A program made the position numbers and the translations under genes. This document shows positions 3,843-28,861 of a DNA stretch of 64,000 nt, one piece after another (within the stretch, counting starts at the first letter, position 1; each line of letters starts with the position of its first letter). Under the pieces are notes generated by a model, which saw only the letters and a program-made list of their open reading frames with translations, did no database searches and was not told where the DNA came from. This DNA comes from Haliotis cracherodii. Lineage: Eukaryota. The DNA lies in contig NW_027266286.1 in the NCBI RefSeq assembly GCF_022045235.1, positions 60,140,001 through 60,204,000 of the forward strand. Reading direction: 5' to 3'.

Positions 3843-6800
3843 CTAGAGAAAAAGGGATGAATTCTTCTTTCTTTTGGAATTTTCCTTCATGGTCAAGAAA
3901 ACGCCCAGGTCTGAAGTTTTCCGGGTCACCCCAGACAGCTTCGTCTTTGAGAACGGAATCTAGGTTGGGGATGATAAAGACACCTTTAGGGAAAGTGTAT
4001 CCTCGGAACTGGACATCATGGGGAACGGTATGGGGAACACTGAGGGGAGCAATGTCAGCGTGTCTCAACACTTCCATAATGGTGGCCTCCATGTAGGGAA
4101 GGTTCGTCTTGTCTTTCATGGAGGGCCGTCTGCTCTGGCCGATGTTTTCCAGAATCTCCTGGAAGCACTTCTCCTGTACATCCGGGTAGTTCAGGATGTA
4201 GACCAGTGCCCAGCGTATTGTAGTAGCTGTTGTTTCTGTCCCGGCAACGAACAGGTTGGTGATAACTCTCTTGAGATTTTCCACTGTAAGGTTAAGCAAT
4301 ATAGCTTGAACTAAACGATTCCGTTATAGAAGATGATTTGTTAAACTATACATAGAAAGTGTGCGACTGTTGAGGAAAAACCTTGACATTACAGAAGAAA
4401 CGCTTCACTCTAAAGTTAAGGTGAAGGGGACATTGACAGGTACTTACAATCCATTGTCGTGAACTCCTTCTGTTGTTGACGCTTTTGCATTTCCTTGATG
4501 TATGCACTCATTACGTCGTCCACGTTCCCGTCATCACGCTGTTTCAAGTGTTCTTCTAACATTGGTTTCAATAGCAGAGACTCCATCAGGTCATCGTTGT
4601 GTAAGGCTCTCTTCGCTTTGAAAATATCCCCAGGCAAGAACCGTAAGAAGGGTAAAAAGTTTACGACGTTGGCGGCTGCTGAAACTGTCATGATGTCATC
4701 CAGAATGTCCAGAAATGTGATAAATAGAGGGTCAGTATATGCAAAGCGTTTTCCAAACACTGTGGAACAGATAACATTGGACACTGAATTGTGTAACAAG
4801 CGCCTGCAGTCAAACCCCAGTCCTTTCTCTGATTCAAAGGCTGCGAGAAGATGCGAGACTTCCTGATGTATTTTGTTTTCCATAACAGGCCTTCCTACAC
4901 CAAATTCCCTCAGAGTATTAAGGGTGAACTTCCTCTGTTCACGCCAGACGTCACCGGAGCTTCCAACTATTCCTGGAAGTTTTAATAATAAGACTGTGAA
5001 ATCAGACCCCAATGGCGTGGGAATGTTACTCAAGCTTGGTTACTGGTGGGCCTGGCCCGTGTTTAAAATTGTTTACATGATATTGTTATGCTCAAATATG
5101 TTTCATAAATTGTTTTTAAATATAACTTTGCATAAATGACTCAATTGTAAACATATTAACTTGGTCTATAGTTGAAATAATGCCTATGCGACGGTACATT
5201 TAACGCATTCACTCACTCACGCACTGTGTGGTTCAGACGCGAGGACCTACAGTCAGACATATAATCGGCGATAATCTGTTTAATCCATGAATATTTGCTG
5301 AAGATATGCTGATAAGGATTAACCACCTTCGTGTATCTCTTGTGATGAAAGTGATATCTTGCAGTGTAATTTATTGTTAAACACTGTTGTAATTGTATTA
5401 TTACATCTCTTCTGTTACGATTCAGTAGTGGTTTATATCATTTTGTTTTGACAATGGTTAGTTGTCAGGAATCTAGCATTATCTAATGTAAGCAGTGGTG
5501 TGGAAGTTACTATATTTAGGTGCGTTTTGAAAAGCTCGACGAATCCAGCGTAGGATAGAACCTTGCAGGAGGTATTAGGCTACACAAGAGAGGGTTAGTT
5601 GTCAGGAATCTAGCATTATCTAATGTAAGCAGTGGTGTGGAAGTTACTATATTTAGATGCGTTTGGAAAAGCTCGACGAATCCAGCGTAGGATAGAACCT
5701 TGCAGGAGGTATTAGGCTACACAAGAGAGGGTTAGTTGTCAGGAATCTAGCATTATCTAATGTAAGCAGTGGTGTGGAAGTTACTATATTTAGATGCGTT
5801 TGGAAAAGCTCGACGAATCCAGCGTAGGATAGAACCTTGCAGGAGGTATTAGACAACATGAGAGAGGGTGCCTCACATATCCCACATTACACATTTCATT
5901 ACATCATTACATCAAGAACAGCGGTTGTTTGAAGATAATTGTTTTCACTCTAAATATCCAGCCAATTGGAAGCTTTACCACTGTTGCTTCTAGGTGGATA
6001 CTACTACTGCTATTATATTTTATACTGCCATTGTAATTGTACTGCCATTGAATTTGGCACTGCCACTCTATTGTGTGCAGCATTTTGTATTGATTTGCAA
6101 ATCTAGTTATAATACAATTGTTAATTTGATATCATTCCTTTGTTGTTTGTTAGATTCACACTGAAGTCTTTTCCCATAAATTGTGTGGGTTAACTTATTG
6201 ACTCAACAAGTAACAAAAGCTAATCACTTATCAGGTTATACTCGTTATAACGCAGGAAATCTGGTAATTATATTTGAACGTCATTTGAAATTGGTTTGTA
6301 AATTATATCAAATATTTTTGCTGTTTTAATTAAGTAACAAATACCTGAATAAATTAAATAATTCTAGCAGTTCATATTGTTGTCTAGATACGTTTTGGTC
6401 TTTGTTTTTTTTAGTTTGATATATATATTATACCTGTGGTATTTTCTCCTACTGTTTTATAGTCCATTTTTTGTCCCAATGTGTAGTTTACTCTGGTTGA
6501 CATATTACCGTTTATACTTGAGAAAAAATACATAGTCAGAGACTTGGTGTGTAATTGATTGCTTTGTGGAATGGTACAGGTGATTTGACAATTGAACAGA
6601 TTAAGTAGTATAGGTAATAGGGGTTCTGGCTCACTTCCACTGGAACCGGAATTATATACCTATACCACCACTACAGGGGGAATTTTTTATGCCAAAATGA
6701 TTATGCAATTGAACAATCGTATGCAGATCAAGTTATATTGGCTCTATCTCAGAATTATTCAGCGCTGATACAACGGCTGATAAACGTGTCACCCATTCGG

Positions 6801-13469: not shown

Positions 13470-16400
13470 TCACTGGTACCCAAAGCTCTCGATAAGTTGC
13501 TGCTCTTTCTTGACTCTGGGCAGGACATTTTTCTTGGCTTGTTCTCGGAGACGCTGTAACACAAACAGAACTTATCAAACTTCTGTCTGGTCTGCAACAA
13601 CTCCGGCAGCTGACCACAATGGAAAGTTTTACATCACAACTGATTAACGCAGGGGTCATTGGAGTGAGTGAGTGAGTGAGTGAGTGTGTTTGGTTTAACA
13701 CCGCTTTTAGCAATATTCCAGCAATATCATGGCAGGGGGACACCAGAAATGGGCTTCACACATTGTACCCATGTCGGGAATCGAACCCAGGTTTCGGCGT
13801 GACGAGCAAAAGCTTTAACCACTAGGCTACCCAAATGCCCCAGGGGTCATTGTAGTTCCAAAACTATATCTGTCAATATTTATGGGTTTTACACGTTAAG
13901 ATATGCATCAACAGTCCTCAGAAAGTTCTGGTGTATCTTATTAAAAATGAAAATTACATCAGATAATTTTTCACAATTCAATATTTACTTCCATTTTTTA
14001 ATATTGCTGCTTGTCTGCTAAAGAAGCTTTGAACTGTGATCCTAATGTTACAAATTAAAGGGTCAAAAGGTCCTTGATGTTCACAGCTACAGTGAACAAA
14101 AGGACCCCTATTTTTCCTGTCATAATTTTGAACTAAAGATCCAAATGCACTGTAACTAAATGTTATTTAGCACACCCGTTCCTGTCAGTCTCAGCTGGTA
14201 GTGCATGTTGCTATTTTCATCAATATCAATACCAGTTTTTTTTATCATCACTGACTGACAGAGGACCACATGGGGTACACACCAGAAGTAGGTTGGTTGC
14301 CACCGCACTCAGCAATATTCCAGCTATATGATGGCGGTCTGTAAATAATCGAGTCATTCCAGACATTCCAGACAAGACATTCCAGTGATTAATATCATGA
14401 GCATCGATCCATGCAATTGTGATCAATGACATGCATCAACCAAGTCAGCCACCCGATCCTGTGAGTCACCTTTTATGGCATGCATGGGTTGCTGAAGACA
14501 TATTCTACCCCCGAATCTTCACGGGTCACGGTTACGATAGATAACTCTACTAAACTGTGACAACTTACAAGTGTTGACTTCCTCCTCTTGAAGTAATCAT
14601 TTGATTTGACCTTCCTCTTTTCTTCCAGCTTGGCAACCACTCCCTGGTACATCCAGCCAACCTCCTTGGACAGGCGGTCCAGTTGACAGAACTGGAACAC
14701 AACCACATCATCACGACGTATCTTCACTGGCACGAGAACAGTGTCAAAAGTCTGTGCTTGTCTCAGATGGTAGTGCATGTAAAAGCTTTTTTCATCAGCT
14801 TCAAAACGCTATGGGATGAGTAAACATCACAGACAAGCTCTCATAGAAACCATTACCTTAATGCATCAGACTTTTGACAAGGTTGTAAAATGAGGTGGCA
14901 AGCTAATCAGGGATGCAAATTACTGCTAATTACTCCACGAACTATATTTTAGGAGAAAGTAGTCCCTCCATCTTTGCTGGGGGATGTCATAACCTGTTAA
15001 GGATAGGGATATTTACAATCAGCAATATCACAAACACAGTAATTGTTTTTGGTCTGGATCAGGTAAACCAATGAAGATCAAAATCAATCAGGCCACCAGA
15101 AATGGGCTCCACACATAGTATCCATGTGAGAAAACAAACCCGGATTTTCGGTGTGACGAGCAAACACTTTAACCACTAGGCTACCCACCAACCCTCTTAA
15201 CAAGGGAGGATTACAGAAGGCACCAATGTCTTACCCTGCTTGTGGGCTTCAGGCGGAGCACTTTGAGAGCAGAGGGAACAACCTGCCTCTTCATCTTGTC
15301 ATAGGGTCCGGGGATCCCCTCAAACATCTTCAGCTTCCTGAGGGCAGCTTTGCCACGAGGCTGCTTGTGGGGGAGCATACCTGCAAGACAACACGTCGGT
15401 CAGTTGGGGCAAGCAGTGGTTTCTGGAGTGAACCTGGTTGGGAGGGGTGATATTTATGGCCATTGAGCATACGTATCTTCAGTCATGGGACCATGACTGA
15501 CTGGTTGGTCGTTTAATGCCCCACACAGCAATATTCCAGCTATATGACGGGGTCTGTAAATAATCGAGTCTAGACCAGACAATCCAGTGATTGACAACAC
15601 GAGCATTGATCCACGCAATTGGGATCGATGACATGCATCAACCAAGTCAGAGCCTGACCACCCGATCCTGTTAGTTGCCTCTTACGACAAGTATAGTCGC
15701 CTTTTACGGCAAGCATGGGTTGGTGAAGACCTATTCTACCCCGGATATTCAAGGGCCGAGTGAACTTAGTAATAAGCTGTCTCAGATGGTAGTGCATGTG
15801 AAGTGGTTTCATCAACTTCAAAACGCTATGGAATGGTATAAACATCACTGACAAGCTTCAAGTTTACAACAGACATCACTGAATACATAGTGATCAGCAT
15901 GGGACCCTGTTTTGTTTTGTAGGAACATGGTTGCTGGTAAACAAGATTACCATCAAAGTCAGGGCTAGAATTAATTTACTTTCTCAAAAGTCAACCTTTA
16001 CAGAATCAGCACTGGTTACATTTGATCAACTAAGTTTCATGCTTATTTTTCTGATGTTTACTTTGCTGTGTTCATTCAGCACATAATTTGACTTGTAGAC
16101 AACTTCTTATTTTGATTGCCTATATAGACCTCTGTCTACCTAACGTCTATGAAGTGCCTACTCGTACTTCAACCACACAGGGTCTACCTTGGCGATACAT
16201 TATAAATGGCACCACCGAGGACAATGTGACAACAGTTTTCGTGTGTGGTACAGGCATGCTTAATGGGGGTGTTCAATAGCTGTCTCAGATGGTAGTGCAT
16301 GTGAAGTGGTTTCATCAACTTCAAAACGCTATGGGATGGTATAAACATCACTGACAAGCTGTATTTACACTTACTTCTTTGTTAGGCATATAGAAGTTGG

Positions 16401-19400
16401 AGTACTAAGTAAGGATAAGATTTATGGATGAACAACTTCTTTATTACAATTAAGAGCAACGTTTCGGTGTAGGTTGTAACACTGTTGTCAAGCAAGTGAT
16501 ATGTGCATCCATAAATCTTATCCTTATCCTTACTCAATGACAATTAGTTTGATTAATACCACAACAGCATCACCTGATTAAGTTCCTGACTGTGGGACAC
16601 ATTTCCAACATGATTTCTGGTGAGCCCAAAACAAACCACCAAAATCAGCTGAGTTTGACATTTACCCTTGGTTTCAATGTGTGCATGACACAACCTATTT
16701 TTTATTTTTAATCATTATCTAAAACTCTGACATTGGAACATGACTTTAATACATAGTGACTCGAAAGTAAGGGGGGCCTCAAGATCTATGGTATTTGAAT
16801 CTAGTGACCCCCTGACATTCATGCTTATTTCAAATAATGTAAATATATATTCAGGTAAAATTTACCAGTGCATATATTTTTCACTCTTTATCTAACTAGT
16901 TTGTTCTATGTTGGATCTGATATCTACCTTACTGTCCTTAATGTGCATACAGCTTTAAATATACTACTCAAAAGAAGTTAAGGATCACCCCATTCTTTCA
17001 TATTACAATAGTTAATCTCTCATGGCATGACAGATTAACATTACCAATATGAAAGAATCGGGTGATCCTTAACTTCTCTTGAGTAGTATATTAATGATTC
17101 ATGCTGTGACATTTATAATTTGACCTAGAAACTACCTCGATACTGACTGATTAATGTAGCCTTCAGCTACTATTACCTCAAACCTAGGAAATGGCTACAT
17201 GTACTTCATTTGTTTTATGCCAAAGTCTGCAATATTGCAGCCATATTACAAAGTCCCAAAAATAATCAAGCCTGGATCAGACAAAATAGTGATTAGCATG
17301 ATTAGTATAAGAGCAACATCATGTCATCAGATCAGAATGACACAATCAACCCGTCGTCAAGACGACAGACCACCTGACTAAACTTTAATCACCTCTTACA
17401 ATAAGCCACAGAGAAGATAATTAGGTGAAAGATTAAAGATACATGTATCAACACTGAGCACATAATAGTGGCACAAGTGAGTGCTTATGGGGGGGTTCAT
17501 GGCAATTGTTCTATATAGCTGTCTCAGATGGTAGTGCATGTGAAGTGGTTTCATCAACTTCAAAACGCTATGGGATGGTATAAACATCACTGACAAGCTA
17601 TATATCTAAACAATGACAGCAACTTCTAAGAAACAAAGAAATATCAATAATTCAAATACTTCAACCAGTGTTCCCGTTTACCGGTAATTTCACGTTTTTA
17701 ACCGGTAAAATTAGGCTTGGATTGGTAATTCATGTGAATACCAGTCCCTGTGGACCGGCAAAGTACCTTATAAATCCTTGTTGTTTAACAAGACATCAGC
17801 GATATTCATATTACTCAGCAGCGTTAGAAACTGGCACTAGTCCTGTAGTCCTTACCAAACTGCCCAATAGTAAAGGTATCCTAAGGACAAGTAGAAATTG
17901 GCCCATTTTAAGGGTTTTGCTATATGTTATCATTATAAGGACTAGTGGACAAAAACTGTTAGTTTCTAACCCTAAATAGTATATATAGCTGTCTCAGATG
18001 GTAGTGCATGTGAAGTGGTTTCATCAACTTCAAAACGCTATGGGATGGTATAAACATCACTGACAAGCTATATATCTAAACAATGACATCACCTTATAAG
18101 AAATGAAGAAAAATAAATAGCAATAACTCATCTATATGTCCAAAGCAGGGGAGGAATGCTCAGCAGTTTCTATCAGAAAAAGAATATTTTCACAAGTATT
18201 CAATGTAGGTAAGGATAATCATCATATAGAAACTGCTCTGTTCATAAGACGGATCACACTCAAACTCTTACTAAAACTCTATTCTCATTCTACAGACACA
18301 ACTTTGAACATCTGACATTAAATGATTTCACATACCAGGATAAGACTTGATGTAACCAGTCTAAATGGAAAGAAGAGGACATTTAGGAACCATTCCTATG
18401 AGAACTTAAAGTACCTTATTCGACGTAATAAGCGCCCAGGGCGCTCTCAAAATTAAAAATGGTGGGCTCTAATTAGAATTCTATTTTGGTGAAAATGAGA
18501 GAGTTAAAAGATAAATTTCGTGGTTTCAGCTGACAGTCTGAAATGTTTATATACGAGATATACATTTTTCCAGAATTTAATTGTCCATAATTAAGAGTGC
18601 ATATAACACACGAGTGTGTATAATACGCGAATAAATAAGTGTTGTGTACATTGATCTATCGGAAGGGGTGCTAATTGGTATTGTTCATAAGCCAATATAT
18701 TAGCAAATATCGCCGTGGGCGCTTATTAGAGCGGGGCGCTTATTACGTCGAATACGGTATTACATTTTCCTATCTTACAAAAAAAATTCTTTATTCAACA
18801 CAAATGACTTGCTTCTTAATCCCTAACTTCACAAAGAAGATGGTCACTGAATTGATTAACATTCTTATTTTAATGATTCGTTGACTTCATTTCCTCAGTT
18901 TTGTGTTTGTCTTCAGGTTTCGGACAATGTAGGTAAAGTCATCACTGGAAATGATTAGATGGTAGTAGGAATATAAATTACAATTAGTCACCACTTTAGA
19001 CTTCCATATACCTAAGGTTTGTTTTCTATTTACTTCTAGAATCCTGTGAGACTGTCCTCTCATCCCTGCAAAACAGTGTGTGATGAGATATGACCATGAT
19101 TCTTTGAAAGTGACCTACACCTCAGACCTGTCATCAAATCCTACAAAAAAAGAGTCCATAATACCATAGACAAATAACTTTGTTCAAGTTTGGTTGTACC
19201 ATTTCTCCTTCAGATACCGTAACCTCATCTTCCCGAGGCAAGGGAGTTAACTAACTTTAAAAGTCCAGTTTCCATCCTTGCCTCGGGAAGATGCCTTAAC
19301 CTCTGACAATGTGACAACTCCATTCTGACTGCCTCATTAACCCTCCAGCCACCCTAAAGTCACAGGAAATGCCTACTCATAATTTAACCCTTGGGGTCCA

Positions 19401-21724
19401 CCAAGACGATACACTAAAGGCAAACATAGCACAATATGACAACAGTTTAAGTGTGTTGTACAGACAGGGGTTTTTTTGGTGTTCAATAGCTGTCTCAGAT
19501 GGTAGTGCATGTGAAGTGGTTTCATCAACTTCAAAACGCTATGGGATGGTATAAACATCACTGACAAGCTATATATCTAAACAATGACAGCAACTTCTAA
19601 GAAACAAAGAAATATCAATAATTCAAATACTTCAACCAGTGTTCCCGTTTACCGGTAATTTCACGTTTTTAACCGGTAAAATTAGGCTTGGACTGGTAAT
19701 TCATGTGAATACCAGTCCATGTGCACCGGCAAAGTACCTTATAAATCTTTGTTGTTGAACAAGACATCAGCGATATTCATATAAGTATATTTTTCGAAAC
19801 GAAGCCTGCTTGTCTGTTAGTTGAATATCAGGATTTCTCCTTTTCTGTTTTTAGTGCAATGACATAACATTTCAGTTGTTTCGAGGTTAAATATATATTT
19901 GTAGCAACTTAGTCTCAAAACATTTGAAAAACAGAAAATTGTGACTGAACTTTGTGTGAATGATGTGTAGATCGAACTAAGTTACTCCAGAGATGTTGAC
20001 ATTGCACTGAACATGTTGGAAGAATTAAAACCAAATTATTTCTATACATTATTTTAATTGTTAAAAATTGGGACTGACAAAAATAGGGGGGGGGGGGGGA
20101 AGAGAGGGAGAAGGAATAACTGTTAAATTTTTACTGGCAGTTTCAAAAGCCAGTGGGAACACAGTCAACCTGTGAAACAATCTATAAGGGGTCACAAGGA
20201 GCTATTTAGGGAATGCACTGAAGAGGTAATGACCAAGATACCCAAACACTGAATAGCTTCAAATAATGACAGTGGCAGTAGCCGCCGTTACAGGGGTGTT
20301 CAATAGCTGTCTCAGATGGTAGTGCATGTGAAGTGGTTTCATCAACTTCAAAACGCTATGGGATGGTATAAACATCATTGACAAGCTATATATTTTCCCA
20401 ATGGCAATTAGGTTTGCCGCATCACCATGATCACGTGTTAAGACACTTCATCAATAGAGGGTTGTAAATTTAACAGTCAGGATGCAAAATGCCAGTAATA
20501 TATGGAGTTCTGTAGCTGCCTACTTAGACAAACCCATCTAAAAGTCCTTCAAATTATGACTTCTTGACATGCAACTTAACAGCCACAGCATTGCCCATGA
20601 GCAAATGTTTCAATTACAAACACCATGGCTGGATTTTCTAGTAAACACAAGACTGAACTGTCAAGATGTGTCATCACAATTTGATTGGACGTCTATTTTT
20701 AGCATGTCATTAAAAGAATGGATCCAGAGTATATATCATATTAGAATGGAGATATGATACACTGGATAATTGAGAATAGAGGTCCTGATTGACATACTAG
20801 AAGTAGATATTTTAACAAGGTTTAGTTAATCAGCAGTTTCTATCAGAATAAGAATATTTTCACAAGTATTCAATGTAGGTAAGGATAATCATCATTTAGA
20901 AACTGCTGGTCGTAAGAAGTAACACAATGAGACACTGCAACAAAAACTTCTCAACAATGTCCATACTCGTTCCTTCAATTTTAACGAATAATTGAATGAA
21001 CTTATGTGTACAACAGATCCATATTAAAGTTAAAGAATTTGGTCAACTTTCCTAAAACCTAACTTAAAATGGATCATTATTTAAATTGCAGACCCAGTAA
21101 TGAAAAACTACAAGCATTATCAAGCACAATGTTTTTTTGAAAGAAACAGTGTTAACCACCAGGAGAGGCAACTGTCATGTGTCACATTTTAAAAACAATA
21201 TTCAGGGCTTGATGTTAGGATCTTGATTTAACTTACTAGCACCAAGTGCATGTTGACAAACAACCTTGTTGCACCAGAAGAAAACAGGTGCCCCCTGGTC
21301 CCAGAAATCTATCAAATAATCCTGAAGTACCCGAGTTGGATGTCAAGCCCCCAAAAGCATGACAAGTTACACATAACAGGGATTATTAACGTAGGTAAAG
21401 AAGGTTTAGAGGTATAGAATGTGTTCAGAGAAACAAATATTAGGTTGCACTGGTGCATATTTTATATAGCTTAATCGAGCCCGGCTATCCGTAATTTCAA
21501 ATACTTCCTTCACAATTGAGGTAAGGTAATCTTAAATCCACACAAATATCTCGTTTATATCATCTTATTGCATACCTATTTGTTAGCTACTAAGCTACTA
21601 CAGAAGAATGCACAAAGATGGCCAGTGCGTGGATCAAATATCCTTTAAGTAATGTCATTTCCTCAGTTTTGTGTTTGTCTTCAGGTTTCAGACAATGTAG
21701 GTAAAGTCATCACTGGAAATGACT

Positions 21725-21781
<57 letters not shown>

Positions 21782-24299
21782 AAGTAGTAGTAGTAGTAAG
21801 ATAAATTACAAGTTAGACAACTCTTAAACACTTCGTTTATGGCAGGATTCTGCTCATTTAAATCTTATTTTAAAAATATACTATATTTGGAACAACGCCT
21901 GCAAATGAATCAGTTAAGCCATGGTTTCAGTTGAGCACGTAAATGTTTAATGGTACCTCGGACAGTCCTCCAGAAGATCATCCTGGGAGCCCGGAAGTGG
22001 AATGGGCCGCGAGCAGGGTTGACGTTGCATCGCTTCTTTAGGAAGTCCAGGTACTTCACTGTAACATTCAGGTCAATCAGGGTAAGAACGGGTCAGTATC
22101 ACTATTACACCACTATGGTATATCTATAAACGTATACAATGGTATTTATAAGTACATGTGTAATATTTGCATAGATTCCATCATGGATCCAGCAGAGTTT
22201 TAAAACAATAGTTTGTCTAAAAATCTTAGCAAAAATTCTTTGAAAGCTTATTGCATTCATATTGTAATATACTACTTAACATTTGCTAAGGGCCAAAATA
22301 GTGTGGTCCTCAGAAAATGTTTAGTCTTTTATCAATGTAATATTCATATGACATACACTTGAACAAATGTTAATTATAACAAAGGTACTGCCATTAAAAC
22401 AGCAATATACCACATGCATTCCAGATGCAACTTGAAAATCACTAAATTCAAGAACTTGTGTTTATAACATGATAACAAGGATGTTAGTGAAATGGACACC
22501 ATTACAGCAATGTCATTATTACAACAAATTGGATAAAAAAACTTACATTTGTTTCTGTAGAAGTTGCCAGATATGCAGATACCTTCACATCGTACAATAA
22601 CAACTCGCTGACCTGGAAAAAATATATGTTATTAAATTTAATACTCCATCATTTTAGTTTGGTACTGGTTCGGTTTCAGTCTGACAACTGAAAACTCTAC
22701 ATTAGTTTGTTCTAATAAAGTATGCAACTATAAACATTTTTATGCATTTTCTAGTTTATGAAAGTATATTTCTCTAATGCAATACCAGGGCAATAGGCAT
22801 AGCGCTAATATCCAAAAATGAAAATATATTCACTCTTTCAATAAAATAAACAACTTAAATAAAGAATTTCTATACTGAATAATCACATTTCCTCAGGTCA
22901 TAGGTGTCGTCACCCTTTCAGACAATGTAGGTAAAGTCATCACTGGATGGGATATTCAGTTTGGTACCAAAAAAACTTCTGTCAGCGTTAAATATCAGGA
23001 CTGTTGTAGGTTACAGTTATGATAATAGCAGCAGAGATGTGAAAAAGTTAATGACTTGACCGCCTGTAGAACTGTTGAATATTTACCTTGTAGTAGTGTC
23101 TTGGCAACAATTGAGGCCAGACGCCCGAGCAGATGCCCTCGGGCATCAATCAAAATGGGCTGAAAGCAAAACAATCAACCATCAGTTTCATTACCACAAT
23201 ATTAATAAAAGTGCATGAGGTGGATTGGTCATAATCTAGTGGCATGGACAAATCTTTCAGGTTTGGGAACTTCAACTTGAATTATTTTTTAAAAAAAAGA
23301 CTTTAAGTTTGTAATCAAGGTAATGTTATTGATCAAATAGTTGACCACTAAATATGATTCATGTTCATACAGCCCTACAGGTAAAAACAAGACCCATTAT
23401 GACTTCCACTACTCTGGGAGCGGGATACAAATTGCCTATGACCATATAAAGTTTAAGGTATTCTGAGTGCCATCATTATCATTCAGGAAAATAAATGCTT
23501 CAATTGATGCTGCATCAATGTTGCTTAAAATTCACTTTGAATTAAAAAATAAACATTTGTTGTGATAAGTGATGAAAAATGAGGTATGAGCATTAATATA
23601 CTCACCAAAAATGTTTGAGATCATTAATATTTTATGGGAATTTGTTATTGTGAAATTGTGAACTCAGTTTCACTACAAAAAAATATCCCCAAAAGTATTC
23701 AGGATACAAATAAAGAGCGATAAATATAAAGCTTGAGGTTAAGACGTCCATTCAAATAGACTTTATGTTCCTGTTTTGCAAGGATTTCTCGAACATCTTG
23801 TTCGCTCAAAGGTGAAGATTTCAGCAATACATGATATGGTAAACGGATTCTGCTACAGATAACCGCTATGTATGGGATATCTTATAACATGACCAGCTGA
23901 AATAGCACAAGTTACCTCTCCTTTATAAACTCATTTGTGAAACGTATTCAGACATTCACATTAACCCTACATCAAAGCTAACTGACGAAAAGGTGAACTG
24001 ATTTATACACTTTCTGGGTGATACAAATTTTGGAAAGAAATATTGCTCGTCTATTCCTGACAAAACTATTTTAAGTGTGAAATACACTCATATCATTTTG
24101 TATCCTATATACACGTGGGTTATAATGCCTTTCACCGAGCATTACACGTACGACGGAGCTTTCATCTTAACATATTGCACTAGAGCCGGTCATAATGTTG
24201 ATTTGCTGTGTACGGGGCAACTTTTCTCGGTTCCTGTGGGGTCCAAACTGACAAAAAATGTAGCACACTGCCGTCATATACCTTGTTCTGAAAACCCAT
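13470..24299 (-). CDS. RPL13A: 60S ribosomal protein L13a (uL13), 203 aa. Exons 24282-24299, 23087-23159, 22547-22612, 21957-22058, 15235-15380, 14569-14691, 13470-13553
   Basis: Spliced translation [26 protein letters not shown]...[40 protein letters not shown]...GMLPHK...EVGW...FGYQ*. 612 nt, all GT-AG; AATAAA at 13453-13448. Confidence 0.97.
14182..14261 (-). ncRNA. SNORD33: Box C/D snoRNA, divergent SNORD33-type (RPL13A intron 6)
   Basis: Box C GTGATGA, guide ACATGCACTACCA before box D CTGA, 9-bp terminal stem; lacks the D' guide of the other copies. Confidence 0.8.
14756..14838 (-). ncRNA. SNORD33: Box C/D snoRNA SNORD33-type dual guide (intron 5)
   Basis: GTGATGT..CATCCCATAGCGTT-TTGA..TGATGA..ACATGCACTACCAT-CTGA; stem GCTTGTC/GACAAGC; ~65 nt from the 3' splice site. 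Confidence 0.88.
15775..15857 (-). ncRNA. SNORD33: SNORD33-type snoRNA copy (intron 4)
   Basis: Same boxes and guides; one C>T in the D' guide (would give G.U). Confidence 0.85.
16278..16360 (-). ncRNA. SNORD33: SNORD33-type snoRNA copy (intron 4)
   Basis: 83-nt copy; 3' end CACATGCACTACCATCTGAG matches recalled human U33. Confidence 0.85.
16408..16534 (-). mobile_element. Penelope-like pLTR remnant with minimal hammerhead-like motif
   Basis: Minus strand TTGACAA-stem II (GTGT/ACAC)-CGAAACGTT then AATAAA; ~21-bp inverted ends; related 3' fragment at ~49833-49873. Confidence 0.55.
16960..17090. mobile_element. Palindromic Tc1/mariner-type MITE
   Basis: ~45-bp TIRs TATACTACTCAA.../...TTGAGTAGTATA with TA flanks. 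Confidence 0.75.
17517..17599 (-). ncRNA. SNORD33: SNORD33-type snoRNA copy (intron 4)
   Basis: Identical to 16278-16360. Confidence 0.85.
17987..18069 (-). ncRNA. SNORD33: SNORD33-type snoRNA copy (intron 4)
   Basis: Identical to 16278-16360. Confidence 0.85.
18162..18237 (-). ncRNA. Box C/D snoRNA, SNORD34-related shifted guide (intron 4)
   Basis: ATGATGA..CCTTACCTACA-TTGA..CTGA with 11-bp terminal stem AGCAGTTTCTA/TAGAAACTGCT. Confidence 0.75.
18412..18759. mobile_element. TA-flanked pogo/Tc1-type MITE (copies also at 50018-50337; partial 45354-45605, 59266-59570)
   Basis: TIR TACCGTATTCGACGTAATAAGCGCCC and its reverse complement; homologous interiors. Confidence 0.85.
18887..18954 (-). 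ncRNA. SNORD34: Box C/D snoRNA SNORD34-type (intron 4)
   Basis: GTGATGA-CTTTACCTACATTGT-CCGA(D')..CTGA; guide matches recalled human U34 ACCUACAUUGU; 8-bp terminal stem. Confidence 0.82.
19488..19570 (-). ncRNA. SNORD33: SNORD33-type snoRNA copy (intron 4)
   Basis: Identical core; shares ~210 bp of flank with the 17517 copy. Confidence 0.85.
20305..20387 (-). ncRNA. SNORD33: SNORD33-type snoRNA copy (intron 4)
   Basis: Identical except box C is ATGATGT. Confidence 0.85.
20831..20908 (-). ncRNA. Second copy of the SNORD34-related shifted-guide snoRNA (intron 4)
   Basis: Differs from 18162-18237 at ~2 positions; flanks look unrelated. Confidence 0.75.
21654..21723 (-). ncRNA. SNORD34: Box C/D snoRNA SNORD34-type (intron 4)
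   Basis: Near-identical to 18887-18954; D' is CTGA. Confidence 0.82.
21727..21797. repeat. (TAG)n microsatellite
   Basis: ~23 units; the paralogous flank near 18960 has only a few units. Confidence 0.95.
22886..22949 (-). ncRNA. SNORD34: Box C/D snoRNA SNORD34-type (intron 2)
   Basis: Same box C, guide and D'; divergent 3' half with C' GTGACGA and D CTGA. Confidence 0.82.
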
Positions 24300-24358: not shown

Positions 24359-25744
24359 TGACTGGGGCCTTGTCTACTAAAATGAGTAAAAGCGATACGC
24401 TTGCGTTGCGTACCAACAGTGGAACCAGTTTAAAACGGAAGAAAATCAAAGGGAGGCTATCCTCATTCAGTGTCTAGGAAACCCGCTCGAACTTACGTAT
24501 CACCATGACTTGCATATTGACACTTTTTGTTTTATTCTTTTTAGAGAGAGATAGCAACACTTGAATGGGACAGTGAAATATATAGACAGCCAACATTCAT
24601 GTATGCCAGGAAATAAATGGTCTTCATTATTTAATTCCCATGAAGATTCCGGGCTAGAATTGGTTTTCAGCAAGAGTGAGTGAGTGTGGTTTTACGCCAC
24701 GTTTAGCAATATTCCAGCAATATCACGACGGGGGACACCAGAGATGGGCTTCACACATTGTACCCATGTCGGGAATCGAACCCGGATCTTCGGCGTGACG
24801 AGCGAACGCTTTAACCACTAGGCTACCCGACCGCCCCTCTTCAGCAAGAGAGCAAGCGGCGACTAACGGGATCGGATGGTCAGGCTTGCTGACTTGATGC
24901 ATGTCATTGTATCCCATTTGCGTAGATCGATGTTCATGGTGTCAATCACTGGATTGTCTGTTCCAGACTCGATTATTTACCGGCCACCGTCATATAGCTG
25001 GAATATTGCAGAGTGCGGCGTAAAACAACAAACAAACTAGGTCGGGGACGTGTCCAAATTTACTACCCGGCTACCCACCTCCCTATTACCCGACCCTACC
25101 CGGGTACCCGCTGTAGATATCTAGAGATAAGTACAAACTGTCCGATTTGGAAAAGTTTGACCGTAGCCCCGGCAAAATGTATTTTGATTCACGTGTAAAA
25201 CAATCTGGTCATTCACACACTGAAGTTTACTGCATGAAGTTTTATCTTTATTCAGACATATAAAAGTCAGAAGGAATGGGTGCATTGTCACCAAGAAATG
25301 GGAATATTATTCAGTTTCTGGTATAAGTCATCCGGACATGTCCCGACCAGTGGGTGACAGAGTCTGAACGAACCACACGGAGTTCTTAGTAAAAACAAAC
25401 AACCCATATAGCTAGCCAAATCGGACACAGATAAATGTTCATTTCGGTAGAATACTTAAATTAACAAACTTTCATTGATCTGTATGTGAAATTTGCTTAT
25501 CGATCCGATATTTGTTACGTAGACAAGAAAAGCGCATTTACCTATAGCAATTGCTATAATAACAAGATCAGTAAGATAAAATAACGGCCAAAAACATTTT
25601 ACCATAGTTTTTATTAACTCTAGTTTAGATAGATGCATCAAGTAAAAAGTATTGAAAAGATTAAAACCTCAACGAAATCAAAAATATACAACATCCGTTA
25701 TTGGTATGACAGTTGCCCGAATGAGATGGGGTAGCATCTGAAGT

Positions 25745-26140: not shown

Positions 26141-28861
26141 GACAGGACCAGAACCAGCCGCTAACGCTAGCTCCATTTGGCCAATTTTAGAATTTGGAAC
26201 ATCCTCTAGGCTGTTTTCAATCTCTGGTGTCATCAGTAACCCCCGCAGCCGCGCATCTCTCAACGCAAATGGTGTCAATACCCGATATTGACATTGTTAA
26301 TTGTGTTAGTTACACCGCCCCTGTTTTTGGGCGTCTCGCTTTGTCAATGAATTTGTTATAATCGAACACCGATCAAACGAATGGCCAAATATTATTATGA
26401 CAATCACTGGATTGTCAGGGCCAGACTCGATTATTTACAGTCATATGAAGCACAGTTACTATTCCCGCTAGTACAGATTTACAATAGTTGCAGAACGAAG
26501 TCAAGGTCACCTGAGTTAATTGTGAAATGCAGTCGTAATTCTTCCTCTTGAATACAATGCAAATAATATTGGCATTAGAGGATTTATACCATGGACTTAT
26601 TCTTCATGCACCTGTGTGATTGTTTTGCCACATTCTGAGTGAGTGAGTGAGTGAGTGAGTGAGTGAGTGAGTATGGTTTTACTCCGCTTTTAGCAATATT
26701 CCATCAATATCACGGCGGGGGACACCAGAAATGGGCTTCACATATTGTACCCATGTCGGGAATCGAACCCGGGTCTTTGGCGTGAAGAGCGAACGCTTTA
26801 ACCACTAGGCTACCCGACCGCCCCACCACATTTTGATGTCAAGGTCATGAGATAGAGAAACATTTCACTCACACCTTTTTGGTTACTCTTTCTAAAATAA
26901 ACCCAGCAAAAACAAGCATCTCCAACTATATAGTGTTATTCTCTAGGCTGCTGTTTTCTGGTCACATTCCAAACATACCTAGCCTGTGACAAAGTACAAG
27001 GGTGCTAAGTCAAAGCAAAACCTCAGTGAGTGAGTGAGTGACTGATTTTATGGCACTTTTAGTAATATTCCAGGAATATCATGGAGGGGGGACACCAGGA
27101 ATGGGCCTCACGCATTGTACCCATGTCTGGAATTGAACCCGGATCTTTGGTGTGATGAATGAACGCTTTAACCACTAGGCTACCCGACCGCCCCTAAAAC
27201 CAAAGTAGTTGATATTGGCAGTATAGACCCTTATACATTAATTAACTTCATCCACATCAAACTGCAGTTCCTCTCAGGTGATCTTCTATCAAAATACAAA
27301 AAAACACTCTAGCCCTTGTGACCACCAATAATATTCACCCAAGGTACTTCTGGGTCCCGCCAATTCCTCTGATTCAACAGTGGACAGTACCAATTGCCTC
27401 CTTTCTGCAGCCTGAACATCCCAACACTGCCCCCTTCTTCAACAGCTTTTCTTATTAAATAAGCTTCTTGGTTATTCTCCAGGTATTTCCTCGTCATTAA
27501 GCTGCTGCTGTATGTGCCCCCTCCATTCATCACACTGCTGGGCAGTTATCTCTCTCAACTTAAAGGAGCAATGGGGTAGCCCAGTGGTTAACGTATCTGC
27601 TTGTCACACTGGGTTCGATTCCCAACATGGGTACAATGTGTGATGACATTGCCATCTTCCCGAGGCAAGGGAGTTAACTGATTATAAAAGACCAAGCCAG
27701 TTTCCACCCTTGCGAACTAGGCTGGAATTATGGAGGTATACTTTGGATGGACTAACTAGTCTTTGCATAGTCCAATCAAAATCATGTACCGAAATCGACA
27801 TCCAGTTAACTCCCTTGCCTCAGGAAGATGGGACATTGCATGAAACCATAATCCCTCACTTGGTCAAAATAAATTAAATCGAGGAAACAAAAACTATTTG
27901 ATATACTTTATTTGCAATATATATACTAAAATTAAAATGCTCACAAAAACTTCAAGTCTTTCACATGGTCTTACACTCAAATGTAAGAGAGTAATAATAA
28001 TCTGATTCACAATTTACAAAAGTCAGACTACTGTCTCGACTTAGAAACCACAACAAAACAGAACAGAAAAAGGATCCTGAAAACTCACAGTCTCTCTCAC
28101 AGTCACACATCCTTCATCCAGCTCCCCAAGCTCCAGTCTGTTTACAGAGAAAGCTGCCCGTATCATGCAAACAATCTTTGTACAAGTGAGTTATTAACTA
28201 ATTTGTGCGCTGACAGTACAGAGATCACCCACAATCTTCCTTCCCTACATCTGGCCAGGAGACACAGCATGACTCCCAGAGGAATAACCGTTAACCCCTG
28301 CACCAGAGTAGGGCATTCATTCGGTATAATATATATATTTAATTCATGATGCCATACAGTAGAAAGGAAAGTAATATGTAATACATTCTTGGTACATTCT
28401 TTGTAAGTCTCTTCCTAAAATAGTACACGATTCAAAAAGAGTATCAGCAAAATAAGAAGTACATGACTGAAATCTACATCATGTATGATTGTGTTCATAT
28501 AATACATTACATGTTCAAAAGTAAATAGACTATATACATGAGATTTCAGTTTTCAGATTTTTTTAATTTTTTTTTTTTCAATATCAATAATCAATTCTAA
28601 TTTGACAAAGGTTTGAAGCAGGATTCTTATAACATACAAAACAACTTAAGACTTCCCAAGCTCTCAAGTATTTGCTGGTCACCATACAATCTTTTCAGAG
28701 ACTCTACAATTAAACAAGGAAGAATTCTCTGCAATTAAACAAGGAAGAATATTATTCTCTGTGTAAAGCTGACATCAAAAAGAGCCTAAACTTCAGCCCA
28801 AACAATGTTTCAAGAGCACTCATTTATGACACACATGACAACAACTGGATTGGCGTGGAGC

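What the first reader, a model, noticed from the sequence alone, without database searches (positions are those of the whole stretch)
15381..21956. Ten box C/D snoRNA genes packed in one RPL13A intron
Seen: intron 4 (6.6 kb) holds 6 SNORD33-type, 2 SNORD34-type and 2 shifted-guide copies, all sense to the host, with no coding exon between them. Established: animal box C/D snoRNAs are normally one per intron and released by debranching plus exonuclease trimming, whereas polycistronic clusters in plants and yeast need an endonuclease. Inference: this locus needs hidden non-coding exons, recursive splicing, endonucleolytic cuts, or it makes sno-lncRNA-like RNAs capped by a snoRNP at each end. Any of these would be notable in a mollusc.
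Basis: partly seen in the sequence, partly recalled or inferred. Interest (0 to 1): 0.8.

Follow-up and report, generated by a model that had tools for sequence, protein, structure and literature searches.

The report
Ten guide snoRNAs in one intron
One 6.6-kb intron of a mollusc ribosomal-protein gene (RPL13A) really does carry ten intact, near-identical methylation-guide snoRNA genes, and other genes of the same genome show the same packing, so this animal probably releases several such RNAs from one intron, although how it does so is not shown here.

Summary
Window 15381-21956 (minus strand) is intron 4 of RPL13A. It holds exactly ten sense-strand box C/D snoRNAs: six SNORD33-type, two SNORD34-type and two SNORD34-related variants. 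All have boxes, 7-13 bp terminal stems and 12-15 bp guides to this genome's own 18S/28S rRNA.

The six SNORD33-type bodies are 97.5-100% identical. Their flanks are at random identity (46-57%) in 12 of 15 pairs. The copies are therefore kept by selection, by gene conversion, or by both.

Independent DNA and RNA-like runs reproduce the spacers and snoRNA-spacer joins, so this is not a misassembly. The only splice evidence is a direct exon 4-exon 5 junction. No internal junction was among those the tool listed. One spacer is only 98 nt.

New here: RPL7A (four snoRNAs in one intron, two in another) and RPL4 (four in one intron) of the same genome break the one-per-intron rule too. Earlier scan notes report the same at CCT5, RPL18 and ATIC, so the scan has seen this before on other DNA of this genome.

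The processing route was not tested. I favour position-independent snoRNP assembly, then endonucleolytic cuts and trimming. Intronic snoRNA clusters are known in plants, Chlamydomonas and fly H/ACA snoRNAs. A large box C/D cluster in an animal is a new variant. Interest is moderate.

The parts
24282..24299 (-). RPL13A exon 1, coding part (ATG GGT TTT CAG AAC AAG), followed by GTATAT 5' splice site
   Evidence: Read from the sequence. The reading frame continues into exon 2.
23087..23159 (-). RPL13A exon 2
   Evidence: Pfam Ribosomal_L13 profile positions 4-24, E 1.3e-4. Splice sites read and scored.
22886..22949 (-). SNORD34-like box C/D snoRNA alone in intron 2, 273 nt from the 3' splice site
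   Evidence: Rfam RF00147 28.4 bits, below the cut-off. Same 15-nt guide to 28S as the intron-4 copies.
22547..22612 (-). RPL13A exon 3
   Evidence: Sequence and frame. Splice-site scores.
21957..22058 (-). RPL13A exon 4
   Evidence: Matches residues 53-85 of solved uL13/L13a chains, E 5e-13.
15381..21956 (-). RPL13A intron 4 (6576 nt, GTACCA...TTGCAG), the finding. It has the weakest 5' splice site of the gene.
   Evidence: A spliced exon 4-exon 5 contig in run X1 shows as a loose end at 21954 carrying exon-5 sequence.
21656..21721 (-). SNORD34-type snoRNA, copy 1 (S34a)
   Evidence: RF00147 38.5 bits, cut-off 38. 15-bp D' guide to 28S (L011 4870-4884). 9-bp terminal stem.
20836..20903 (-). 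SNORD34-related variant, copy 1 (Va): guide duplex shifted by one position, no canonical D' box, 12-bp terminal stem
   Evidence: RF00147 31.8 bits. Guide pairs with L011 4871-4885. Stem.
20306..20385 (-). SNORD33-type snoRNA, copy 1 (box C AUGAUGU)
   Evidence: RF00133 52.8 bits. Alignment A1.
19489..19568 (-). SNORD33-type snoRNA, copy 2
   Evidence: RF00133 54.5 bits.
18888..18953 (-). SNORD34-type snoRNA, copy 2 (S34b). D' box reads CCGA instead of CUGA.
   Evidence: RF00147 34.6 bits. Sequence.
18166..18233 (-). SNORD34-related variant, copy 2 (Vb), 11-bp terminal stem, only 98 nt upstream of the next snoRNA
   Evidence: RF00147 32.5 bits..
17988..18067 (-). SNORD33-type snoRNA, copy 3 (13-bp extended terminal stem)
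   Evidence: RF00133 54.5 bits. Stem.
17518..17597 (-). SNORD33-type snoRNA, copy 4
   Evidence: RF00133 54.5 bits. Shares a 297-nt, 98% identical duplicate with copy 2.
16279..16358 (-). SNORD33-type snoRNA, copy 5
   Evidence: RF00133 54.5 bits.
15776..15855 (-). SNORD33-type snoRNA, copy 6, 395 nt from the 3' splice site
   Evidence: RF00133 54.3 bits.
15235..15380 (-). RPL13A exon 5
   Evidence: Matches residues 87-133 of solved uL13/L13a chains, E 5e-17.
14757..14837 (-). SNORD33-type snoRNA alone in intron 5, 65 nt from the 3' splice site. About 85% identical to the intron-4 copies.
   Evidence: RF00133 53 bits. Identities.
14569..14691 (-). RPL13A exon 6
   Evidence: Sequence and frame. 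Splice-site scores.
14185..14258 (-). SNORD32/33-type snoRNA alone in intron 6, 631 nt from the 3' splice site
   Evidence: RF00133 47.7 bits. 12-bp guide to the same 18S site.
13470..13553 (-). RPL13A last exon, coding part (ends ...ESFGYQ, then stop)
   Evidence: Read from the sequence.
18412..18759 (.). High-copy MITE with 26-bp terminal inverted repeats, inserted in a spacer. Absent from a contig of run X8.
   Evidence: Inverted repeat. Depth, loose ends and X8 record 27.

Best explanation
**What it is.** Intron 4 of RPL13A is a locally amplified family of ten functional box C/D snoRNA genes. Their order is S34-V-S33-S33 / S34-V-S33-S33 / S33-S33, which looks like a four-gene block duplicated once plus two extra SNORD33-type copies.

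**What is shown or directly read.**
- The ten genes exist, intact and in sense orientation, inside one intron.
- Their guides fit this genome's own rRNA at the sites equivalent to human 18S Um1326 and 28S Um2824. The equivalence to the human sites rests on my own knowledge of the human sequences.
- The SNORD33-type copies also carry a D'-side match to 28S.
- The snoRNA bodies are held nearly identical while their flanks are randomised.
- The host mRNA joins exon 4 directly to exon 5.
- Other host genes in the genome are built the same way.

**What is inferred.**
1. The array is transcribed only as part of the RPL13A pre-mRNA, since no conserved upstream motif is present.
2. Each copy folds its own strong 7-13 bp terminal stem and assembles a snoRNP co-transcriptionally, independently of distance to the branch point. 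Distances to the 3' splice site in this gene range from 65 to 631 nt, so the vertebrate 70-80 nt spacing is not kept.
3. After or independently of excision of the whole intron, endonucleolytic cuts in the unconstrained, transposon-tolerant spacers separate the snoRNPs.
4. Exonucleases then trim each one to its protected ends.

This is the logic of plant and yeast polycistronic snoRNA processing, and of fly H/ACA intronic clusters, applied to an animal box C/D array. One splicing event would then yield up to ten snoRNAs. This fits the fact that all SNORD33-family copies found in the genome sit in this one gene.
For: - **Count and intactness:** Rfam hits and an independent motif scan giving 10 sense against 1 antisense.
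- **Single intron:** exons 4 and 5 match adjacent residues of uL13.
- **Guides:** 12-15 bp complementarity to the genome's own rDNA unit L011 at 18S 1411-1423 and 28S 4870-4885, and a 14-bp D'-side match at 28S around 4060-4080.
- **Conservation:** bodies are 97.5-100% identical. The 100-nt flanks are 46-57% identical in 12 of 15 pairs, against 51 +/- 3.4% for random 100-mers of the same intron.
- **Only locus:** every SNORD33 hit in the 1.18-Gb genome lies here.
- **Splicing:** a direct exon 4-exon 5 junction contig in run X1. Exon depth is far above intron depth in X1, X3 and X8, with low continuous intronic coverage.
- **Free spacers:** transposon insertions are present in the assembly but absent from an X8 contig.
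- **No exon in every gap:** one spacer is only 98 nt, with no usable 3'ss/5'ss pair.
- **Stems:** terminal stems of 7-13 bp.
- **Same architecture elsewhere in the genome:** the RPL7A intron holds SNORD36-SNORD14-SNORD36-SNORD14, and the RPL4 intron holds four SNORD18-like copies. In both cases the flanking exon pieces match consecutive residues.
- **Literature:** plant polycistrons are cut by RNase III and then trimmed (PMC5122169). Some intronic snoRNAs are made without splicing in frog oocytes and human extracts (PMC11028025).
Against: - No RNA evidence for mature individual snoRNAs, for cleavage sites or for any endonuclease. The runs available were contigs only, probably poly(A) RNA or DNA, which cannot show small RNAs or RNA ends.
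- Only 15 of 321 joints were listed, so rare internal splice junctions could have been hidden.
- No conserved structure or motif was found in the spacers that could act as a cleavage signal.
- In mammals, two box C/D snoRNAs in one intron give a stable sno-lncRNA rather than being separated (PMC4234469, PMC11028025).
- Perfect identity of four copies could reflect gene conversion alone rather than selection on each copy.
Confidence: 0.5

Rival explanations
1. Hidden alternative exons. The 6.6-kb interval is also spliced through non-coding cassette exons (unproductive, NMD-sensitive isoforms), so that in some transcripts most snoRNAs sit alone in a smaller intron and mature by the canonical debranching-plus-trimming route.
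For: - Human snoRNA host genes produce many NMD-sensitive splice variants thought to serve snoRNA production (PMC4233243 abstract).
- My crude scan finds 15 sense 3'ss-like and 16 5'ss-like sites and 14 exon-like pairs in the intron, slightly above shuffles at 7.9, 15.1 and 6.3.
- Rare isoforms would be dropped from contigs, and only 15 of 321 joints were listed.
Against: - No minus-strand GT..AG joint (CT..AC on the plus strand) is among the listed joints. The only junction seen from exon 4 goes to exon 5.
- The 98-nt spacer between 18166 and 18067 cannot reasonably hold a branch point, acceptor, exon and donor. The 423-nt spacer 16278-15856 has no scoring acceptor.
- The enrichment over shuffles is about 2 SD and the antisense strand scores similarly. 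The gene's real acceptors score poorly with my matrix, so the scan has little power.
- Spacers differ by transposon insertions between samples.
- The same explanation would need many hidden exons in RPL7A, RPL4 and other hosts.
Confidence: 0.2
2. Exonuclease-only processing. The whole intron is excised and trimmed from both ends. This would give snoRNA-ended long RNAs (sno-lncRNA-like, up to about 5.9 kb, or short ones such as a 246-nt Vb-S33c species). Single snoRNAs would arise only when their neighbours fail to assemble a snoRNP, so extra copies would mainly raise the chance of getting one product per intron.
For: - Two snoRNAs in one intron are sufficient for sno-lncRNA formation in mammals, and mouse RPL13A makes a SNORD33-SNORD34 sno-lncRNA when exon skipping puts both in one intron (PMC4234469; PMC11028025).
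- It needs no new enzyme.
- Low-level contigs in RNA-like runs run continuously through snoRNAs and both flanks, for example X8 20450-21162 and 18208-19538.
Against: - Those contigs are equally explained by pre-mRNA or DNA carry-over, at well under 1% of exon depth by my estimate from the bin depths.
- Selection keeping all inner copies intact is hard to explain if they rarely mature.
- Multi-kilobase spacers carrying transposons would be unusual in a stable RNA.
Confidence: 0.2
3. Mostly inert duplicates. Only one or two copies are processed, and the rest are young or gene-converted passengers with no function.
For: - Four copies are 100% identical, which gene conversion could produce without selection.
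- An earlier scan note on another intron of this genome also invoked gene conversion (s1-829578).
- One SNORD34-type copy has a mutated D' box, CCGA.
Against: - The homology tracts end within a few nucleotides of the snoRNA termini in most pairs, for example 83 nt for the 80-nt copy at 15855. Conversion alone would not respect these boundaries.
- Boxes, stems and guides are intact in all ten copies.
- None of the 40 listed between-sample differences falls in the 11% of the stretch occupied by snoRNA bodies. About 4.4 would be expected. The listing is truncated, so this is weak support.
- The same pattern recurs in several host genes.
Confidence: 0.07
4. Assembly artefact. A repeat was expanded by the assembler.
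For: Identical 80-nt copies break k-mer contigs, so copy number cannot be read directly from short-read contigs.
Against: - Every spacer is unique sequence.
- In the DNA-like run X19 the spacers appear as single-copy contigs at uniform depth 30-42. These run into the snoRNA edges or across them (18046-18209). X8 links three snoRNAs in one contig.
Confidence: 0.02

Closest known systems
Vertebrate RPL13A snoRNA host locus (SNORD32A, SNORD33, SNORD34, SNORD35A), including the mouse RPL13A SNORD33-SNORD34 sno-lncRNA
   Same: Same host gene and the same snoRNA families (Rfam SNORD33/32 and SNORD34). The guides aim at the equivalent 18S and 28S positions. [quoted passage not shown]
   Different: [quoted passage not shown] Here ten copies share one constitutive intron and three more sit singly in introns 2, 5 and 6. 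No SNORD35-type was found.
Intronic snoRNA gene clusters of rice, Chlamydomonas and Drosophila (H/ACA)
   Same: Several snoRNAs in the same orientation inside one spliceosomal intron of a host gene, made by local duplication. Cited in PMC3089462 and in the reference lists of PMC5122169 and PMC2246290.
   Different: According to PMC3089462, fly box C/D snoRNAs keep to one per intron and only the H/ACA snoRNAs are clustered. The plant and algal cases are not animals. I could not read the primary papers (not held). Spacers here are long (98-1159 nt) and carry transposons.
Polycistronic snoRNA clusters of plants and yeast processed by RNase III plus exonucleases
   Same: The proposed release logic is the same: cut between snoRNPs, then trim to the protein-protected ends (PMC5122169).
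   Different: Those clusters have their own promoters and short spacers. This array is intronic and host-driven. No cleavage signal or enzyme was identified here.
Imprinted mammalian tandem arrays (SNORD115, SNORD116)
   Same: Many near-identical box C/D copies in one transcription unit.
   Different: From my own knowledge, those arrays have one snoRNA per intron, separated by non-coding exons, and sno-lncRNAs arise only where two share an intron. Here no exons between copies were detected, and the guides are canonical rRNA guides, not orphans.

Membership tests
Box C/D snoRNA, SNORD33/SNORD32 family (Rfam RF00133) | Score at or above Rfam's gathering threshold (44 bits) over the full model | tested here: met
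   Six intron-4 copies score 52.8-54.5 bits over model positions 1-85. Copies in introns 5 and 6 score 53 and 47.7 bits.
Box C/D snoRNA, SNORD33/SNORD32 family (Rfam RF00133) | Box C, box D and a terminal stem. Guide upstream of box D complementary to 18S, with the target at the fifth paired position. | tested here: met
   Box C is G/AUGAUGU, box D is CUGA, and stems are at least 7 bp. CAUGCACUACCA(U) pairs with 18S at L011 1411-1423. The fifth position falls on the U of GGUGGUGCAUGG.
Box C/D snoRNA, SNORD34 family (Rfam RF00147) | Score at or above the gathering threshold (38 bits) | tested here: inconclusive
   One copy passes (38.5 bits). The second SNORD34-type copy (34.6) and both variants (32.5, 31.8) fall below.
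Box C/D snoRNA, SNORD34 family (Rfam RF00147) | D' guide complementary to the conserved 28S site (ACAAUGUAGGUAAGG) | tested here: met
   A 15-bp duplex with L011 4870-4884 for the SNORD34-type copies. The variants pair with 4871-4885 but lack a canonical CUGA D' box. Copy 18953 has CCGA.
Any functional snoRNA | Accumulates as a mature RNA of about 65-80 nt bound by fibrillarin/NOP56/NOP58/SNU13, and the target nucleotide is 2'-O-methylated | not testable with these tools
   Only contigs of public runs were available. They cannot show small RNAs or RNA ends.
Intronic snoRNA gene cluster | Two or more snoRNAs in the same orientation between two consecutive exons of the host mRNA | tested here: met
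   Ten snoRNAs lie between exon pieces matching uL13 residues 53-85 and 87-133. A spliced exon 4-exon 5 contig is present.
Intronic snoRNA gene cluster | No promoter of its own; expression through the host transcript | tested here: inconclusive
   Upstream flanks are not conserved among copies (alignment A1), so no shared promoter motif exists. Transcription itself was not measured.
sno-lncRNA | Two snoRNAs in one excised intron | tested here: met
   See the rows above. This is the prerequisite stated in PMC4234469.
sno-lncRNA | A stable non-polyadenylated RNA whose two ends are snoRNAs | not testable with these tools
   No poly(A)-minus or raw-read RNA data could be laid.
Recursive splicing | Juxtaposed acceptor and donor (Y-tract AG|GURAGU) inside the intron, used as a ratchet point | tested here: inconclusive
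   One such site exists, at 18092 (TTTCTTATAAG|GTGATG). Sites passing the same thresholds occur 0.7-0.9 times per 6.6 kb across the window, so this is chance level. No junction to it is listed.
Ribosomal protein uL13 / RPL13A (host gene) | Exon translations match uL13 in order along the protein | tested here: met
   Pfam Ribosomal_L13 matches profile positions 4-24 (exon 2) and 96-117 (exon 5). PDB uL13/L13a chains match at E 5e-13 and 5e-17. Exons were searched one by one. The joined protein was not built.

The most novel reading that the evidence does not exclude
This mollusc lineage routinely matures many box C/D snoRNAs from single introns. It would do so through a pathway that is independent of splicing position and uses endonucleolytic cleavage, an animal counterpart of plant polycistronic snoRNA processing. 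RPL13A intron 4 would then deliver up to ten guides per splicing event. Tandem amplification inside introns, rather than spreading to new introns, would be the lineage's normal way to raise snoRNA dosage.
Probability: 0.4. Interest if true: 0.65.

Novelty: new variant of a known kind. Interest (0 to 1): 0.5.

Why it matters
In vertebrates, box C/D snoRNP assembly is tied to splicing: one snoRNA per intron, at a fixed distance from the branch point. When two share an intron the product is a sno-lncRNA.

Here an animal genome packs ten conserved box C/D guides into one constitutive intron of a highly expressed ribosomal-protein gene, and it does the same in RPL7A and RPL4. That is a natural test case for how the coupling can be relaxed.

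If the inner copies mature, an unknown animal endonucleolytic or otherwise position-independent route must exist. If they do not, the locus should make a family of snoRNA-ended long RNAs.

Either outcome can be tested directly with total RNA from abalone tissue. The copy-specific single-base variants give built-in tags for which copies are used.

Tried and rejected
1. **Recursive splicing.** The only acceptor|donor site (18092) occurs at background frequency, 0.7-0.9 per 6.6 kb. It would not separate the snoRNAs anyway. Rejected as evidence.
2. **Ab initio hidden exons.** My approximate splice-site matrices gave a roughly 2-SD excess of acceptor-like sites over block shuffles. The antisense strand scored similarly, and the gene's real acceptors scored as low as -3.9, so the scan cannot decide.
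3. **Own promoters.** No conserved upstream sequence exists among the copies.
4. **Retroposed snoRNA copies.** All family members lie in this one gene in one orientation. Some pairs keep 100-300 nt of shared flank. Local duplication fits better.
5. **A deletion allele joining 17762 to 19731.** The joint has 20-27 nt sides and a depth about ten times single copy, so it comes from a dispersed repeat shared by both places.
7. **Primary papers on fly and rice intronic clusters** (PMC1370813, PMC135747). Not held, so I rely on how later papers describe them.
8. **The joined RPL13A protein.** It was deliberately not assembled.
Full report
**1. What is there**

Rfam places eight SNORD33/32-family hits and one SNORD34 hit above threshold on the minus strand between 14185 and 21721. 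A permissive scan adds three more SNORD34-like hits inside the finding's interval and one in the intron upstream.

Inside 15381-21956 the order, 5' to 3' on the minus strand, is:

| Name | Type | Coordinates |
|---|---|---|
| S34a | SNORD34-type | 21721-21656 |
| Va | SNORD34-related variant | 20903-20836 |
| copy 1 | SNORD33-type | 20385-20306 |
| copy 2 | SNORD33-type | 19568-19489 |
| S34b | SNORD34-type | 18953-18888 |
| Vb | SNORD34-related variant | 18233-18166 |
| copy 3 | SNORD33-type | 18067-17988 |
| copy 4 | SNORD33-type | 17597-17518 |
| copy 5 | SNORD33-type | 16358-16279 |
| copy 6 | SNORD33-type | 15855-15776 |

A scan of my own needs only a box C, a box D 40-115 nt downstream and a terminal stem of at least 5 bp. 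It returns exactly these ten on the sense strand and one weak candidate on the antisense strand.

**2. The host and the intron**

Reading the minus strand gives a seven-exon RPL13A:

- exon 1 ends at 24282, with the ATG at 24299-24297
- exon 2 is 23159-23087
- exon 3 is 22612-22547
- exon 4 is 22058-21957
- exon 5 is 15380-15235
- exon 6 is 14691-14569
- the last exon starts at 13553, with the stop at 13472-13470

- Exon 2 and exon 5 give Pfam Ribosomal_L13 matches at profile positions 4-24 and 96-117.
- Exon 4 matches residues 53-85 of solved 203-residue uL13/L13a chains.
- Exon 5 matches residues 87-133.
- Residue 86 is the split codon G|GT, so nothing coding is missing between exons 4 and 5.

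Its donor, GAG|GTACCA, is the weakest of the gene on my rough scale (4.0 against 6.7-8.7).

Three further snoRNAs sit alone in introns 2, 5 and 6 (22949-22886, 14837-14757, 14258-14185). Their distances to the downstream acceptor are 273, 65 and 631 nt. The last copy in intron 4 lies 395 nt from its acceptor. The roughly 70-80 nt spacing typical of vertebrate box C/D snoRNAs (my own knowledge) is therefore not a feature of this gene.

**3. Are the copies functional-looking?**

I took the genome's own rDNA unit (locus L011) and looked for guide duplexes.

- **SNORD33-type D guide.** It pairs over 12-13 bp with 18S at L011 1411-1423 (GGUGGUGCAUGG). The fifth position upstream of box D falls on a U. 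From my knowledge of the human sequence this is the equivalent of 18S Um1326.
- **SNORD33-type D' region.** It has a 14-bp run (with G-U pairs) against 28S near L011 4060-4080.
- **SNORD34-type D' guide.** It pairs over 15 bp with 28S at L011 4870-4884, the equivalent of human Um2824.
- **The two variants.** They pair with 4871-4885 but lack a canonical D' box, so their target register is uncertain.
- **Copy 18953.** Its D' box reads CCGA instead of CUGA.

All ten have terminal stems of about 7-13 bp.

**4. Selection or conversion**

The six SNORD33-type bodies are 97.5-100% identical; four are identical. The 100 nt on either side are 46-57% identical in 12 of the 15 pairs. Random 100-mers of the same intron give 51 +/- 3.4%.

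BLAST of the region against itself shows that homology usually stops within a few nucleotides of the snoRNA ends. For example, it covers 83 nt for the 80-nt copy at 15855. The exceptions are:

- a recent 297-nt, 98% identical duplicate (19782-19486 and 17811-17515);
- an older 269-nt, 80% identical pair (19574-19313 and 16364-16098).

The order S34-V-S33-S33 occurs twice, which suggests a four-gene block duplication followed by indels and transposon insertions.

The single copy in intron 5 keeps its boxes and guides but is only about 85% identical. This shows how far a functional copy can drift. The perfect identity inside intron 4 therefore probably also involves gene conversion among the copies. 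Either way the snoRNA units, and only those, are being preserved.

**5. Is it an assembly artefact?**

No. I laid contigs of four public runs on 15991-21990.

- **X19** has flat depth of about 35 over unique sequence, exon included, so it reads as DNA. It yields single-copy contigs over the unique spacers that run into the snoRNA edges. One 164-nt contig (18046-18209) spans the whole 98-nt spacer between Vb and the next SNORD33-type copy.
- **X8** gives an 896-nt contig that links Vb, S34b and a SNORD33-type copy (18208-19538). It lacks two transposon insertions (18414-18788 and 19227-19307).
- The runs carry different organism codes and differ from the window by 0-6% in the spacers. The array is therefore shared by several samples, probably by related species.
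- None of the 40 listed differences falls inside a snoRNA body, where about 4.4 would be expected. The listing is truncated, so this is weak support only.

**6. Splicing evidence**

In X1, X3 and X8 the bin containing the end of exon 4 is far deeper than the unique intron sequence (1027, 88 and 246 against roughly 4-20). X1 also has a contig whose loose end at 21954 continues with exon-5 sequence. I infer that these are RNA runs and that exon 4 is joined directly to exon 5.

None of the 15 listed joints has the CT..AC ends expected of a minus-strand intron; they trace to dispersed repeats. However, 306 joints were not shown, contigs drop rare isoforms, and small RNAs cannot be seen. Hidden exons are unsupported but not excluded.

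**7. In-silico look for hidden exons and ratchet sites**

Approximate splice matrices found 15 acceptor-like and 16 donor-like sites on the sense strand. Block shuffles gave 7.9 +/- 2.9 and 15.1 +/- 3.5, and the antisense strand gave 12 and 14. The gene's true acceptors score between -3.9 and 3.2, so the matrices discriminate poorly.

Two spacers argue against an exon in every gap. The 98-nt spacer 18165-18068 is too short. The 423-nt spacer 16278-15856 has no scoring acceptor.

The single juxtaposed acceptor|donor site (18092) is at background frequency.

**8. The locus is not unique in this genome**

All SNORD33-family hits of the 1.18-Gb genome are in this gene. Searching other families turned up further arrays.

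| Host gene | Exon pieces (residues of solved chains) | Intron | snoRNAs in that intron |
|---|---|---|---|
| RPL7A / eL8 (contig C5, minus strand) | 91-166 and 164-209 | 3.4 kb | SNORD36, SNORD14, SNORD36, SNORD14 |
| RPL7A, intron 2 | | | two SNORD14 copies |
| RPL4 / uL4 (contig C1, minus strand) | 58-142 and 137-190 | 4.4 kb | four SNORD18-like copies (34-36 bits, below the cut-off of 41) |

Earlier notes of this scan report the same in CCT5, RPL18, ATIC and another intron. I did not check those. They also call the genome an abalone, which I did not verify. Multi-snoRNA introns are thus a property of the genome, with RPL13A intron 4 as an extreme case.

**9. What is known**

- Reviews describe a predominant one-snoRNA-per-intron rule in animals, and sno-lncRNAs when two snoRNAs share an intron (PMC11028025).
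- Vertebrate 'clusters' are copies in different introns of one host (PMC2653536).
- In Drosophila the intronic clusters are H/ACA, while box C/D snoRNAs keep to one per intron (PMC3089462).
- Intronic clusters including box C/D are described for rice and Chlamydomonas. I have only the titles, cited in PMC3089462 and PMC5122169; the primary papers were not held.
- Plant polycistrons are cut by RNase III and then trimmed (PMC5122169).
- Mouse RPL13A makes a SNORD33-SNORD34 sno-lncRNA when exon skipping places both in one intron (PMC4234469).
- I found no paper on snoRNA organisation in molluscs.

The earlier scan note's phrase 'already known in flies' therefore needs the qualifier that the fly precedent concerns H/ACA snoRNAs.

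**10. Verdict**

The mechanism is inferred, not shown. I favour host-driven transcription and position-independent snoRNP assembly on strong terminal stems, followed by endonucleolytic separation in unconstrained spacers and exonucleolytic trimming (confidence about 0.5). The rivals are:

- hidden NMD-type exons (0.2);
- exonuclease-only products with snoRNA ends (0.2);
- largely inert gene-converted duplicates (0.07);
- misassembly (0.02).

It is a new variant of a known kind of organisation, of moderate interest. It would become considerably more interesting if RNA data showed that the inner copies mature.

Noticed in passing
G000 C5:20350455-20358036 (loci L013, L016), minus strand: RPL7A (eL8) hosts at least eleven box C/D snoRNAs (SNORD14 x5, SNORD36 x3, SNORD24 x2, one SNORD53/92-like). 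Four of them (SNORD36, SNORD14, SNORD36, SNORD14) share the 3.4-kb intron between consecutive coding exons, and two SNORD14 copies share intron 2.
   Followed up: partly
G000 C1:6110713-6117405 (loci L012, L015), minus strand: RPL4 (uL4) carries six SNORD18-like copies (34-36 bits, below the Rfam cut-off of 41). Four lie in one 4.4-kb intron within repeated stretches spaced about 540 nt apart that include a SINE-like piece.
   Followed up: partly
G000 C67:46883641-46884180 (locus L014): Two SNORD14 copies lie 447 nt apart on the plus strand, with a sub-threshold SNORA21-like hit 3 kb upstream. The host gene was not examined.
   Followed up: no
window 21951-21959 (minus strand): The donor site of the ten-snoRNA intron (GAG|GTACCA) is the weakest in the gene by a rough consensus score (4.0 against 6.7-8.7). 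Whether slow splicing favours snoRNP assembly is speculation.
   Followed up: no
window 18412-18759 and 19227-19307: A high-copy MITE with 26-bp terminal inverted repeats and a second small palindromic element sit in spacers of the array. Both are missing from an 896-nt contig of run X8, so they are insertion differences between samples or species.
   Followed up: partly
window 16958-17092: A 135-nt near-perfect hairpin (87% arm complementarity) gives a sub-threshold plant MIR9563 hit (44 bits, cut-off 90). High depth in all runs marks it as a dispersed hairpin element, not a microRNA gene.
   Followed up: partly
window 18888-18953 (minus strand): The second SNORD34-type copy has CCGA in place of the CUGA D' box next to its only rRNA guide. 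It may be a weakened or inactive guide even if the RNA is made.
   Followed up: no
window 20836-20903 and 18166-18233 (minus strand): The two SNORD34-related variants pair with the same 28S stretch shifted by one position. They have AAUA where the D' box should be, so the methylated position cannot be assigned from sequence. This is the subject of another first-reader note.
   Followed up: partly
window 21726-21798: A (CTA)24 microsatellite, written AGT on the plus strand, directly abuts the 5' side of the first snoRNA of the array.
   Followed up: no
window 24761-24832 (-), 26748-26819 (-), 62021-62092 (+), and weaker at 13766-13836 (-): Rfam tRNA hits just above threshold (30-34 bits) lie next to repeated flanking sequence. 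They look like tRNA-derived SINE copies rather than tRNA genes. Similar pieces lie in RPL13A introns 5 and 6.
   Followed up: no
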